A stretch of 64,000 nucleotides of DNA from Haliotis rubra (Eukaryota): contig NW_025766181.1 of assembly GCF_003918875.1 (NCBI RefSeq), positions 434,001 through 498,000 on the forward strand. The letters run 5' to 3'. The first letter of the stretch is position 1; each line of letters starts with the position of its first letter. Shown here piece by piece: positions 5,337 to 8,286 of the stretch. Below the pieces are notes generated by a model. That model made no database searches. It was not told where the DNA came from and saw nothing but the letters and a program-made list of their open reading frames with translations. Position numbers and translations under genes: made by a program.

Positions 5337-5395
5337 TTACTGACTTTGGTAGAGTCCTCCGCCGGGAGTCTGGACAACTTGTTGGTAATCTGGAG
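5337..5395 (-). CDS. Small secreted peptide gene, last coding exon (TPDYQQVVQTPGGGLYQSQ*)
   Basis: Acceptor gatcttttacag; phase 1 matches upstream exon; TAA at 5339-5337; AATAAA at ~5280-5275. Confidence 0.72.
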
Positions 5396-6300
5396 CTGTA
5401 AAAGATCATGAAACACGATGAGTGGAGAGATTGCAGGCTCCGTCGTAGGTTTCTATTTTCGCTTGCCGGGATTGTGAAATTGCGTGTCTTCGGGTCTCAT
5501 TTCATAATCGTATTTTTTAAATTGTGTCTACACGTTCACAGGGAACCGATGCTTGAATCTGGAAGTCATCGACCATGGCTTATAAAATAGCCGCTTTTCC
5601 CTGACATATGTGTTCCAAATAGCGTGACTGTTGGTGATCTATAGCTTAACGTGTTTCATGCTAGTAGCGGTTGAAATGGCTGTTGACTGGTCAGCGTGTC
5701 AGGTTATTGACCAGTCAAACGATTCACGGGGCCACGGTATGTAGTTTTTTGGCTGGAATATTCATCATGTTTCTGGTTTGGAATAAAGTGTTGTAGAGGC
5801 CACATTTTTCACCTTGGCGAATTAATGATTATCATGATTGACTGCGTATGTGTCGGGTCATTGAGACATGAGTCGATAATCGGATGTGTATACTGTATCT
5901 ATCCGTTTTGTCTGCTCGGAGTCAAGCCTTGTTCATTCTTGCAGTTGTAGGACTCGCCAGGAACTCTGAGTTATGTAGTCAGCGACACACGACATATATC
6001 TCCAATATTGTTAAGCACCGCTCATTCATAAACATATTAATAATTCCCAACTTCCATGTATGTTTGGGAAATACTTCGTCTGACATATGCTCATTTTGAT
6101 GCATAGTTAATATTCCAATTAAAACGTTGCTTCGTGAAGAACTTGTATTACACCATTACATGTTCTCGAAGATGATCGAAGAATAGTTACGTTATACAGG
6201 AGATTTCATATATACCTGATGTACGTGTAGTATTGTTTGTGTGTCTACGTCTATGTCTATTGTCTATGTTTTCTTATGTTTACTTTCTGGTTATACTCAC

Positions 6301-6369
6301 TGCCATCAGGGATAGTCAAAATACGGGTTCTTCCTAGTCCTGAAGTTCTCCGTCCACCGTAGAGGCTTC
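6301..6369 (-). CDS. Small secreted peptide gene, internal 69-nt exon (GSLYGGRRTSGLGRTRILTIPDG)
   Basis: Acceptor cattgaacag, donor A|GTGAGT, symmetric phase 1-1, open frame. Confidence 0.72.
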
Positions 6370-6929
6370 CTGTTCAATGTCAATGTATAGTTTGCACTGT
6401 ATGAATAGCAACAGGTCTAATGTACGTTTACCCCATTACAAACAATATGTCCAAATACGATAAGACGATATATAATATTATTTGTGTACATAGCATATGG
6501 CTTGTTGGAAATACGTAGGTATTTGTTATTAGTTACATAAATAGTTTTCTTGTGCAGTTACATATGCAAATATACAGTTTTACCTTCTTTCATAGAATCA
6601 AGATATAGTATATTTACAGCTTTATGTACTTATTCTCGGCGGGGTATGAAACACACTATCTTCACTGCACATCTAAACATGCTTACACCTTCATGAGCCT
6701 GTTTAAGACACCTTCTTACAGCTACATAACATCAGCTGACGCCTAATCCGACACGTGTCACTACCGTGACAGTGAAAAAGTGCATTCAATTATAACTATT
6801 AAAGTTATCATCTACTGCAATGAAACAAAATGGGGAAAAGAATTGTCCAAACATAAGATTACGTGACCACTCGACCATTCGCCTGGCACTGATGGGATCT
6901 GGCATAAAACTGTTCATCACCAGTACGAC

Positions 6930-7093
6930 AGACTGACTGAATATTGTTTTACGCCGCTTTTAGCAATATTCCAGCAATATCACGGCGGAAGACACCAGAA
7001 ATGGGCTTCTCACATTGTACCCATGTGGGGAATCGAACCCGGGTCTTCTGCGTGACGAGCGAACGGTTTAACCACTAGGCTACACCACCACCG
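6930..7093 (-). mobile_element. tRNA-derived SINE family A
   Basis: A/B boxes (TAGCCTAGTGG, GGTTCGATTCC) and the shared tail. Confidence 0.9.
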
Positions 7094-7372
7094 ATATGTA
7101 TGATGCGTCCACCTACATCAGTGAATAAAAACAACCTGATTTCCAGTGTACTCGTATTTGTTTAATCAACAAATGAAGATACGTTCAGGTTCCAGAAAGA
7201 ATGAAACTATTATCTCCTCACACCAACAACCTCAGTGGTTGTTTGCATGTGCTGCTGCCCCGACGGTGTATTGCGTTGTTCATAATATCAATCACCGTGT
7301 ATGACTCCACGTTTAATGGTCGCCGTTTAGGAGCATTAAAATACATCAAAAGTAATTTTGACAATATCCTAC

Positions 7373-7439
7373 CTCTGTTGTACATCCCGCTGACGAGGCA
7401 TGGCAGCAGGCACAAGGTTATCACAAGAACTGTCCTCAT
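7373..7439 (-). CDS. Small secreted peptide gene, signal-peptide exon (MRTVLVITLCLLPCLVSG|MYNR)
   Basis: Acceptor tttatttattcag (exon starts 7449), ATCATGA start context, hydrophobic signal ending V-S-G, donor G|GTAGGA, phase 1. Confidence 0.78.
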
Positions 7440-8226
7440 GATGAACAATCTGAATAAATAAACATGCAACTGTTTCCTTATTCCTTCAAGTGTTTACACC
7501 ACACTCCAGAAACGGTTTTCATCCTAAATGCAAACCAGTAAAGTTTAATAGCATGCTGACTATTTTCAAATTATTGTAAGCATGTATTGAGTTTGGGCGG
7601 CATTTTGTGAATATTGTCACTATGTAATATGTAATTTGAACTTGAGAAACGCAGCCAACGTTTGTGAAAAACAAGTTAATTACGTATCGCCACACAGAAA
7701 TAGATACGATCTGCTAGACGAAATGATGAAATTAACTAACATTCGTCCACGATTTAAGCGACACAATTTTTCTTATCAAAGAAAAAATGTTGAATGAGCA
7801 TATTTCAGCGAAACATACCATAACCAATTACCATGTCAGGTCTGCAGTGTATTTGCATACGGCATATGTTTCAAATTCAGTTTTCAAAGAAAATTTAAAT
7901 ATTCCAAGCCACATCGTTTAGGTTATATCAGCTCTATATCACTATCCATGAGAAAAAAAACCACGCTAAAATTTGTATATAATGTATACAATGCATAATG
8001 ACACTAAACATTTCGATGCAAATCTTAACACGACTACAATCAAGATTCATATTTCGTAAAGCAATATGTTCGTTTGTCCAATTCGTTCTTAATTGAATAC
8101 GGAAAACATGAAATATTACCACGAACAAGTTAAATGATGTACAATCGGTAATTGCATATACTTGTAAAGTTGTCGAAAGCAATACATGATTTCATGTCAA
8201 TATGAAAATGTATGTCAGTGGCTTAC

Positions 8227-8286
8227 CTGGTTAAGTATGAAAGGTAAATGGAATGGTCGTACTTAGTCTATGGATTGCCTTATATA
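8227..8286 (-). promoter_or_regulatory. TATA box, Inr and short non-coding first exon of the small peptide gene
   Basis: TATATAAG at 8286-8279, CCATTCC Inr ~32 nt downstream (A at 8254), donor CAG|GTAAGC at 8227. Confidence 0.65.

What the first reader, a model, noticed from the sequence alone, without database searches (positions are those of the whole stretch)
5337..8286. Hidden four-exon gene for a 64-aa secreted micropeptide
Seen: TATA and Inr, a non-coding exon ending at 8227, then exons 7449-7373, 6369-6301 and 5395-5337 splice in frame to MRTVLVITLCLLPCLVSG-MYNRGSLYGGRRTSGLGRTRILTIPDGTPDYQQVVQTPGGGLYQSQ*, followed by AATAAA. The mature 46-mer has a cationic Gly/Arg/Tyr half and a Gln-rich half. 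Established: G-R-R is a dibasic cleavage and amidation signal, which would release MYNRGSLYG-amide. Inference: an orphan matrix, antimicrobial or signalling peptide that ORF callers miss.
Basis: partly seen in the sequence, partly recalled or inferred. Interest (0 to 1): 0.8.

Follow-up and report, generated by a model that had tools for sequence, protein, structure and literature searches.

The report
Truncated model of abalone secreted-protein gene
The proposed 64-residue "hidden micropeptide" is really the first half of an ordinary ten-exon abalone gene for a secreted, glycine/arginine/tyrosine-rich protein of about 142 residues. Standard pipelines already annotate this gene, without a known function, in three other abalone species.

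Summary
The ATG, the signal peptide, both coding junctions (7373/6369 and 6301/5395) and the reading frames are confirmed by orthologous RefSeq proteins. These come from Haliotis asinina (139 aa), H. rufescens (165-168 aa) and H. cracherodii (162 aa), and they read straight across those junctions.

The end of the model is wrong. Exon 4 stops at 5345 (CAAA|GTCAGTAA), so the "SQ*" tail is read-through of a conserved donor site. The AATAAA at 5280 is intronic and is not conserved.

Six more phase-1 exons follow:
- 4409-4302, 2356-2342 and 2149-2129 inside the window;
- three more beyond the window's left edge.
Four of these are micro-exons of 15-33 nt. The product is about 142 aa.

The frame is under purifying selection (dN/dS 0.18, p about 1e-9). 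The TATA box, Inr and exon-1 donor are conserved. The G-R-R site is G-R-G in H. asinina.

The mature protein is basic (pI 10-11), has no cysteine and is predicted to be disordered. It was found only in Haliotis, and its function is unknown.

The gene is real, but it is not a micropeptide and not hidden.

The parts
8287..8450 (-). Conserved proximal promoter with reiterated CACTGTGAC/GTCACAGTG-type motifs
   Evidence: It is about 90% identical to H. asinina over the core, with long invariant runs. It lies in the longest and best-conserved block of the locus, 81.6% over 537 nt. The repeats and an inverted repeat were found.
8279..8286 (-). TATA box (TATATAAG here; TATAAAAG in H. asinina)
   Evidence: Only 4 independent TATA+Inr sites occur in the 128 kb of both strands of the window.
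8227..8254 (-). Non-coding exon 1. The predicted start is the Inr A at 8254, and the donor is CAG|GTAAGC after 8227.
   Evidence: The Inr and 18 nt around the donor are identical in H. asinina. The donor score is in the 99.8th percentile. There is no ATG in the predicted 5'UTR. The start site and this junction are inferred, not shown by RNA.
7373..7449 (-). Exon 2: 10 nt of 5'UTR, the ATG at 7439, an 18-residue signal peptide plus MYNR, phase-1 donor
   Evidence: It matches residues 1-20 of P0002 at 95%. Six synonymous against four non-synonymous differences.
6985..7105 (-). SINE copy inside intron 2
   Evidence: More than 5000 first-look candidates in the genome, the best at 92-97% identity. 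The exons are single copy.
6301..6369 (-). Exon 3 (SLYGGRRTSGLGRTRILTIPDG), phase 1 at both ends
   Evidence: P0002 reads across both of its junctions. Eight synonymous against three non-synonymous differences.
5345..5395 (-). Exon 4, corrected (PDYQQVVQTPGGGLYQ); it ends at 5345, not 5337
   Evidence: The orthologues continue with I/V-E-D after LYQ.
5337..5344 (-).
   Evidence: It is identical in H. asinina, whose genomic read-through also gives SQ*. It is the weakest donor in the gene, with a score of 0.6.
5275..5280 (-).
   Evidence: It aligns to AATATC in H. asinina, so it is not conserved.
4302..4409 (-). Exon 5 (EDRRTHLIGGRLRTSLQLENF...DGYIL), phase 1 at both ends
   Evidence: tblastn of P0002 gives E = 1e-12.
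3156..4228 (-). 49-nt minisatellite of about 22 copies inside intron 5
   Evidence: visible.
2342..2356 (-). Exon 6, a 15-nt micro-exon (G-GSPY)
   Evidence: It has the strongest acceptor of the gene, and its splice sites are conserved in H. asinina.
2129..2149 (-). Exon 7, a 21-nt micro-exon (A-GGNSFG)
437..457 (-). Exon 7', an identical second copy of exon 7 with intact splice sites. It sits in a segment of about 400 nt duplicated within intron 7; H. asinina has a single copy.
   Evidence: Whether it is spliced in, which would add 7 residues in frame, is unknown.

Best explanation
The finding covers the promoter and first four exons of a real ten-exon gene on the minus strand.

Gene structure:
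- The gene runs about 11.3 kb, from a TATA/Inr promoter (start near 8254) to a stop codon 3 kb beyond the window's left edge (contig C1291:430994, L008 position 6994).
- Nine coding exons, all separated by phase-1 introns, add up to 429 nt. That gives about 142 residues, or 149 if the duplicated exon 7' is used.
- Four of the exons are micro-exons of 15, 21, 33 and 18 nt.

Product:
- An 18-residue signal peptide is followed by a conserved block of about 95 residues.
- Next comes a Gly-rich tail built from the micro-exons, whose length varies between species.
- The C-terminus is an invariant QPSLF..R..RY.
- The mature protein is 13-15.6 kDa and strongly basic (pI 10-10.8). It has 18-23% Gly, about 11% Arg, eight Tyr, and no Cys or Trp. 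It is predicted to lack a stable fold.

The 64-aa 'micropeptide' arises from reading through the weak but conserved exon-4 donor into a TAA two codons later.

Shown: the gene structure, orthology with RefSeq 'uncharacterized protein' entries in three Haliotis species, purifying selection on the frame, and promoter conservation.

Inferred, at roughly 35%: after secretion the protein acts as a disordered extracellular structural or mucus/matrix component. Its arginines would bind polyanions such as acidic matrix proteins or mucin sugars. Its tyrosines would allow cation-pi interactions or oxidative cross-linking. Its flexible Gly-rich tail grows or shrinks by micro-exon gain and loss. In architecture this resembles bivalve KRMP and shematrin proteins.
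For: Orthologues:
- the exhaustive search with the exon-3 frame found P0002.
- its sequence spans both coding junctions and continues past LYQ.
- P0002 is XP_067673494.1 of H. asinina, an annotated 7.1-kb gene.
- further orthologues in H. rufescens (three isoforms) and H. cracherodii, 162-168 aa, with an alignment at 89% mean column identity.

Structure in our genome:
- every orthologous exon is present in our genome with AG...GT boundaries in phase 1.
- the loci are collinear.
- an unbiased scan for open phase-1 micro-exons between exons 5 and 10 returns only the orthologue-matched exons.

Selection and regulation:
- dN/dS 0.18 over 131 codons, Fisher p = 9e-10.
- the TATA box, Inr and exon-1 donor are conserved.
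- all splice sites are conserved.
- no equally good model was found by chance.

Protein properties:
- composition and pI.
- pLDDT 0.46 and 44, with only the signal helix modelled.
- (PMC3896809): the architecture and C-terminal RnKmY signature of KRMP and shematrin proteins.
Against: - Transcription in this genome, the start site, the 8227/7449 junction, use of exon 7' and the 3' end are therefore all inferred.
- The function is not supported directly. The invariant motifs are absent from the supplementary files of the H. laevigata shell proteome paper. PMC3896809 reports that shematrin-type domains are absent from H. asinina gene products.
- The Atlas look-alikes (Prisilkin-39-like, pro-resilin, cuticle protein) score only 0.79-0.82, a level the tool says chance reaches a third of the time.
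- The Gly-rich tail has few true GnY repeats, and the C-terminus has no lysine.
- The alignment used for the fold has only five close sequences, so low pLDDT is weak evidence for disorder.
Confidence: 0.88

Rival explanations
1. In this species some transcripts would skip the weak exon-4 donor, end at the intronic AATAAA (5280-5275) and yield the 64-residue protein ending in SQ. This product might then be cleaved at G-R-R to give an amidated nonapeptide.
For: The exon-4 donor is the weakest in the gene, with a score of 0.6. An in-frame TAA follows within two codons, and an AATAAA lies 57 nt further on. Our genome and the H. rufescens and H. cracherodii proteins do have G-R-R.
Against: - The AATAAA is not conserved in H. 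asinina.
- The TAA is part of the conserved donor motif GTCAGTAA, so its conservation is explained by splicing.
- No protein of 40-128 aa sharing the signal-peptide exon exists in a collection that holds three annotated abalone proteomes, including three H. rufescens isoforms of 165-168 aa.
- G-R-R is G-R-G in H. asinina.
- The downstream exons are under purifying selection.
Confidence: 0.05
2. The full-length protein is a prohormone or neuropeptide precursor that is cut at basic sites (GRR, RxR, the C-terminal RRxRY) into signalling peptides.
For: - A signal peptide is followed directly by a short peptide and G-R-R in most species.
- Several R-x-R and R-R sites are present, and there are no cysteines.
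- The G-S-[LV]-Y-G-[GN] motif occurs twice, in exon 3 and in exon 9.
Against: - The dibasic site is lost in H. asinina.
- Conservation is even across about 95 residues instead of forming peptide islands between variable spacers.
- There are no acidic spacer regions.
- The motifs are absent from the supplements of the H. discus hannai ganglia transcriptome and peptidome paper.
- It resembles none of the molluscan neuropeptide families I know of; that judgement rests on my own knowledge and was not tested.
Confidence: 0.1
3. The protein is a cationic, glycine-rich antimicrobial or immune effector secreted into mucus or haemolymph.
For: It is strongly cationic (pI 10-10.8), Gly-rich, small, secreted, cysteine-free and lineage-restricted. 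That these properties are common among invertebrate Gly-rich antimicrobial proteins is my own knowledge.
Against: dN/dS of 0.18 indicates purifying rather than diversifying selection. The gene is single copy with no paralogue expansion. There is no amphipathic helix or other predicted structure. No experiment bears on the idea.
Confidence: 0.15
4. There is no gene: the exons are a chance assembly of open frames and splice-like motifs.
For: Short exons of about 70 nt are open by chance about a third of the time, and no RNA evidence was obtained.
Against: Annotated orthologues in three species read across the junctions. dN/dS is 0.18 with p = 9e-10. The promoter and all splice sites are conserved. 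No comparable model appeared in 120 shuffled windows.
Confidence: 0.01

Closest known systems
RefSeq 'uncharacterized protein' XP_067673494.1 (Haliotis asinina), LOC124132089 isoforms X1-X3 (H. rufescens) and XP_071110823.1 (H. cracherodii)
   Same: These are orthologues. They share the signal peptide (19 of the 20 residues aligned by tblastn), the N-terminal block, the Gly-rich micro-exon tail and the QPSLF..R..RY end. Exon order and phase-1 introns are the same, and the locus is collinear with H. asinina.
   Different: - Our copy has an extra DRP repeat in exon 5 (a 9-nt indel).
- It has a duplicated exon-7 segment.
- It has a 49-nt minisatellite in intron 5.
- It lacks the extra Gly-rich segments of H. 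rufescens and H. cracherodii.
None of these proteins has a described function.
Bivalve KRMP and shematrin shell-framework proteins (Pinctada; described in PMC3896809)
   Same: The architecture is similar: a signal peptide, a basic N-terminal part, a Gly- and Tyr-containing pre-C-terminal region, and a C-terminus made of a basic run ending in Tyr (RnKmY there; R.RRY or RRxRY here). KRMPs are also small, at about 10 kDa.
   Different: - No sequence homology has been shown.
- The basic residues are arginine, not lysine.
- There are few true GnY repeats, and Gly is 18-23%, lower than the Gly/Tyr dominance described for those proteins.
- The motifs were not found in the H. laevigata shell proteome supplements.
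- The cited paper states that shematrin-type domains are absent from H. asinina gene products.
Single-copy amidated neuropeptide precursors (signal peptide, then peptide, then G-K/R-R, then an associated peptide)
   Same: In our genome a short peptide follows the signal peptide and is followed by G-R-R.
   Different: The site is not conserved across the genus. The rest of the protein is as well conserved as the putative peptide, and no peptidome evidence was found.

Membership tests
Haliotis LOC124132089 / XP_067673494.1 orthologue group | Sequence similarity along the whole protein, exon by exon | tested here: met
   All nine coding exons have counterparts. Identity per exon runs from about 73% (exon 5, tblastn) to 100%, with lower values in the divergent tail of exon 5 and in exon 10.
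Haliotis LOC124132089 / XP_067673494.1 orthologue group | Same exon-intron structure and a collinear locus | tested here: met
   Exon order is the same, all introns are phase 1 and the splice sites are conserved. blastn blocks are collinear across promoter, introns and 3' flank. The gene is single copy in our genome.
Micropeptide / smORF product (100 residues or fewer) | The mature mRNA encodes a protein of at most about 100 residues | tested here: not met
   The coding exons sum to 429 nt, giving 142 residues. The orthologues are 139-168 residues. No relative of 40-128 residues was found.
Amidated neuropeptide precursor | A conserved Gly plus dibasic processing and amidation site flanking the bioactive peptide | tested here: not met
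   The site is GGRR in our genome, H. rufescens and H. cracherodii, but GGRG in H. asinina.
Amidated neuropeptide precursor | Peptide detected in nervous tissue | tested here: inconclusive
   The motifs are absent from the 12 supplementary files of the H. discus hannai ganglia transcriptome and peptidome paper. That is a different species, and the coverage of those files is unknown.
Shematrin / KRMP | C-terminal RnKmY signature (RKKKY, RRKKY, RRKY and similar) | tested here: inconclusive
   The C-termini here are RSRRRY, RVRRY, RRTRY and RRSRY. Each is a basic run ending in Tyr but contains no Lys.
Shematrin / KRMP | A dominant Gly-Tyr repeat domain (GnY followed by a hydrophobic residue) | tested here: not met
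   Gly is 18-23% and there are eight Tyr in all. The tail has GG-x motifs but few GnY units.
Shematrin / KRMP | Sequence homology to Pinctada family members | not tested
Searches with the Haliotis profile found only Haliotis proteins.
Shell matrix protein (operational definition) | Identified in a shell proteome | tested here: inconclusive
   The four invariant motifs are absent from the 28 supplementary files (6.2 M characters) of the H. laevigata nacre and prismatic proteome. This argues against the idea but does not exclude low abundance or insoluble cross-linked forms.
Secreted protein | N-terminal signal peptide | tested here: met
   Basic residue at position 2, a 14-residue hydrophobic core, and V-S-G before the predicted cut (heuristic scan). 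Conserved in all orthologues and modelled as helix 2-19. SignalP itself was not available.

The most novel reading that the evidence does not exclude
The family is an abalone-specific, intrinsically disordered Arg/Gly/Tyr-rich extracellular protein. It would have converged on the KRMP/shematrin design (basic head, Gly-rich flexible tail, basic-Tyr end) and would work as a cross-linkable or coacervating component of mucus, periostracum or another secreted material. Its tail would evolve by gain and loss of phase-1 micro-exons, and the intact exon-7 duplicate in this genome would be a caught-in-the-act example of that process.
Probability: 0.25. Interest if true: 0.45.

Novelty: already known. 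Interest (0 to 1): 0.22.

Why it matters
This is mainly a correction. A first-pass reader can get promoter, start codon and early junctions right and still truncate a gene when a weak donor is followed at once by an in-frame stop and a chance AATAAA. The real gene is an ordinary, already annotated but uncharacterised, genus-restricted secreted protein.

Its modest points of interest are three:
- a tail assembled from 15-33-nt phase-1 micro-exons whose number differs between species;
- an apparently recent in-frame exon duplication;
- a promoter that is conserved better than the coding sequence.

If the KRMP/shematrin-like reading held, it would add a gastropod case of convergent low-complexity matrix proteins.

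Tried and rejected
One by-reference own-genome search of the same stretch ran in the same batch. One by-reference protein search and one short-motif paper search followed before I decided to leave that stretch alone.

2. The joined spliced protein of this genome has no reference. I searched exon by exon by reference and used the stored orthologue P0002 and alignment A2 as proxies.

3. The word search with the exon-2 genomic frame found nothing. Its length filter of 40-128 aa excludes the 139-168-aa orthologues.

4. The exon-3 frame (38 aa) is below the word search's 40-aa minimum, so it went to the exhaustive search instead.

5. Pfam gave nothing except a sub-threshold 10-residue Proteasome_A_N match. 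Rfam gave nothing in 5000-8600. There are no tRNA genes.

6. No paralogues were found in the window or the genome at DNA or protein level.

7. Paper searches for within-exon motifs, invariant family motifs and accession numbers gave no relevant hit. The shell-proteome and ganglia-peptidome supplements were negative.

8. The Atlas structural neighbours (phage proteins, TM 0.27-0.36) are meaningless for a model with pLDDT 0.46. Fold search was not run on the AF2 model with pLDDT 44 for the same reason.

9. The weak periodic tblastn hits of exon 4 to the neighbouring giant gene's repeats are 4-of-6-residue compositional matches, and I dropped them.
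Full report
**1. What is in the sequence**

The window is an abalone contig, G000:C1291:434001-498000, from a 1.38-Gb assembly (earlier notes).
- a TATA box at 8286-8279;
- an Inr whose A lies at 8254, 32 nt downstream of the first T;
- a donor CAG|GTAAGC after 8227;
- exon 2 at 7449-7373 with its ATG at 7439;
- exon 3 at 6369-6301;
- an acceptor before 5395.

All introns are GT-AG. Each exon is open only in the claimed frame, and the three pieces give 64 codons and then TAA. The first ATG of the predicted mRNA is the start codon.

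**2. Is it more than chance?**

I used generic metazoan splice matrices taken from my own knowledge. Five of the six sites rank in the top 3% of all GT or AG dinucleotides on the strand, and the exon-3 acceptor is at the 82nd percentile. TATA plus a correctly spaced Inr occurs at four independent places in 128 kb.

A scripted enumeration asked for the following chain: signal-peptide-like ATG exon, donor, nearby upstream acceptor, open internal exon, terminal exon, AATAAA, and an upstream TATA/Inr with its own donor. It found this locus and no other on either strand. In 120 Markov-shuffled 128-kb sequences no complete model appeared. The start exon with its acceptor alone was expected 0.03 times (strict) or 0.33 times (loose). 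The strict thresholds were set from the candidate itself, so this is supporting evidence, not proof. The loose scan also recovered ATG 51002, the start of the neighbouring giant secreted-protein gene, which served as a positive control.

**3. The RNA test could not be run**

Everything was done exon by exon by reference.

**4. The decisive hit**

- The exon-2 genomic frame (window:7221-7439:-) found nothing among proteins of 40-128 aa.
- The exon-3 frame (window:6260-6373:-, 38 aa) was too short for the word search, so I gave it to the exhaustive search of 1.84 billion representatives.
- That search returned P0002, 139 aa.
- P0002 starts with the same signal peptide. After ...GGLYQ it continues with I-E-D-R-K-T-H-L-I-G-G... 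instead of S-Q-stop.
- P0002 is RefSeq XP_067673494.1, 'uncharacterized protein [Haliotis asinina]', an annotated 7.1-kb gene on CM074526.1 of GCA_037392515.2.
- Further orthologues are LOC124132089 isoforms X1-X3 of H. rufescens (168, 167 and 165 aa) and XP_071110823.1 of H. cracherodii (162 aa).
- Single-sequence, profile and exhaustive searches found nothing outside Haliotis.

**5. The real gene in this genome**

Mapping P0002 on the window and on the fetched left flank, L008 = C1291:424001-434000, gives nine coding exons. All have AG...GT boundaries and all introns are phase 1:

| Exon | Coordinates | Length |
|---|---|---|
| 2 | window 7449-7373 | 77 nt |
| 3 | window 6369-6301 | 69 nt |
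| 4 | window 5395-5345 | 51 nt |
| 5 | window 4409-4302 | 108 nt |
| 6 | window 2356-2342 | 15 nt |
| 7 | window 2149-2129 | 21 nt |
| 8 | L008 8628-8660 | 33 nt |
| 9 | L008 8214-8231 | 18 nt |
| 10 (coding part) | L008 6994-7040 | 47 nt |

The coding parts sum to 429 nt, which is 142 residues.

The same letters, and therefore the same 'SQ*' read-through, occur in the H. asinina genome, where the annotated gene splices there. The AATAAA at 5280-5275 aligns to AATATC in H. asinina.

An unbiased scan of the 7.3 kb between exons 5 and 10 looked for open phase-1/phase-1 micro-exons with acceptable splice sites. It returned only exons 6, 7, 7', 8 and 9, plus one longer alternative of exon 7.

**6. 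Evidence that it is functional**

- The two loci are collinear from promoter to 3' flank.
- Over 131 aligned codons there are 37.3 synonymous differences on 101 sites, against 25.7 non-synonymous differences on 292 sites. That gives dS 0.51, dN 0.094, dN/dS 0.18 and Fisher p = 9e-10.
- All splice sites are conserved.
- The best-conserved block of the whole locus (81.6% over 537 nt, about 90% in the core) is the promoter plus exon 1. It includes the TATA box, an identical Inr, an identical exon-1 donor region and about 90 nt of nearly invariant upstream sequence with reiterated CACTGTGAC-type motifs.
- That RefSeq lists three H. rufescens isoforms suggests transcript support there. This rests on my general knowledge of how that pipeline works and was not checked.

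**7. The protein**

All orthologues share four parts: the signal peptide, a conserved block of about 95 residues, a Gly-rich tail of variable length that corresponds to the micro-exons, and an invariant QPSLF..R..RY end.

The mature proteins are 13-15.6 kDa with pI 10.1-10.8. They have 18-23% Gly, 13-17 Arg and exactly eight Tyr. They have no Cys or Trp and almost no Lys.

The ESM Atlas model (pLDDT 0.46, pTM 0.23) and an AlphaFold2 run on the five-sequence alignment (pLDDT 44, pTM 0.14, only the signal helix modelled) both suggest disorder. The shallow alignment weakens that inference. No Pfam family matches.

**8. Function (inferred)**

The layout is a basic head, a Gly-rich flexible tail and a basic run ending in Tyr. 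This recalls bivalve KRMPs and shematrins, whose Gly-Tyr domains and C-terminal RnKmY signature are described in PMC3896809.

Several things stop this from being more than a resemblance:
- No homology has been shown, the basic residues are Arg rather than Lys, and GnY repeats are few.
- The same paper says shematrin-type domains are absent from H. asinina products.
- The invariant motifs do not occur in the supplements of the H. laevigata shell proteome or of the H. discus hannai ganglia peptidome.
- The Atlas feature neighbours (Prisilkin-39-like, pro-resilin, cuticle protein) are Gly/Tyr-rich structural proteins, but their scores are at chance level.

I commit to a secreted, disordered, polyanion-binding and possibly Tyr-cross-linked extracellular component at about 35%. 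The cationic antimicrobial reading gets about 15% and the prohormone reading about 10%. The rest is unknown.

**9. Species-specific details**

- A segment of about 400 nt containing exon 7 with both splice sites is duplicated 1.69 kb downstream, inside intron 7, at about 97-98% identity by eye. H. asinina has one copy. If exon 7' (457-437) is spliced in, it adds seven residues in frame.
- Exon 5 has an extra D-R-P unit, a 9-nt indel.
- Intron 2 holds a copy of a SINE with more than 5000 genomic candidates.
- Intron 5 holds a 49-nt minisatellite of about 22 copies.

**10. Verdict**

The interpretation as a hidden 64-aa micropeptide is wrong at the 3' end. The gene is an ordinary genus-restricted secreted-protein gene that is already annotated in three congeners and is functionally uncharacterised. 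Interest is low. The micro-exon-built tail and the exon duplication are the only mildly notable features.

Noticed in passing
window 3156-4228: A 49-nt minisatellite of 21.9 copies with 94% matches fills half of intron 5. No comparable array is reported in the H. asinina intron.
   Followed up: partly
window 6985-7105: A SINE copy with a tRNA-like head lies in intron 2. It has more than 5000 first-look candidates genome-wide at 92-97% identity. ARAGORN and Rfam do not call it a tRNA.
   Followed up: partly
L007 17215-18769: In H. asinina an 86-nt unit is repeated 18 times (98% matches), starting about 80 nt after the gene's stop codon. Our genome has a single unit at the matching place (window coordinates -3086 to -3176, in L008).
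   Followed up: partly
window 8330-8400: The proximal promoter holds three CACTGTGAC/GTCACAGTG-type motifs, including a 10-nt inverted repeat. They are almost invariant between the two abalone species and are candidate transcription-factor sites.
   Followed up: partly
window 13343-15837: A strongly strand-skewed CT/GA-rich low-complexity stretch contains four N-masked runs (13374-13532, 13845-14013, 14027-14199, 14482-14666). It produces long spurious ORFs on both strands. The N runs were left alone.
   Followed up: no
window 19728-20526: A plus-strand tandem repeat gives reiterated ORF text (units like ...CLVITTLSLSVTAWSSPLYHCQ). It is probably a satellite or a repeat-derived element.
   Followed up: no
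window 28562-51002 (minus strand): The giant Ser/Thr/Gly/Gln-rich secreted-protein gene noted by earlier agents lies about 20 kb upstream on the same strand. My signal-peptide scan independently flagged its ATG at 51002. Weak periodic matches of exon 4 to its repeats are compositional only.
   Followed up: partly
L007 23480-27133: In H. asinina the next called gene downstream, on the opposite strand, carries NYD-SP28 domains (PF14772, PF14775). I did not check whether the same neighbour exists in our contig.
   Followed up: no
window 2093-2128 and 401-436: After exon 7's donor, the frame stays open for 36 more nt in the upstream copy, up to a second strong GTAAGT donor. This gives a possible 57-nt alternative exon 7 (...GGKCFRFLNLLTG). 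The segment is partly absent from H. asinina, and the second donor is damaged (GTTAAGT) in the duplicate copy.
   Followed up: partly
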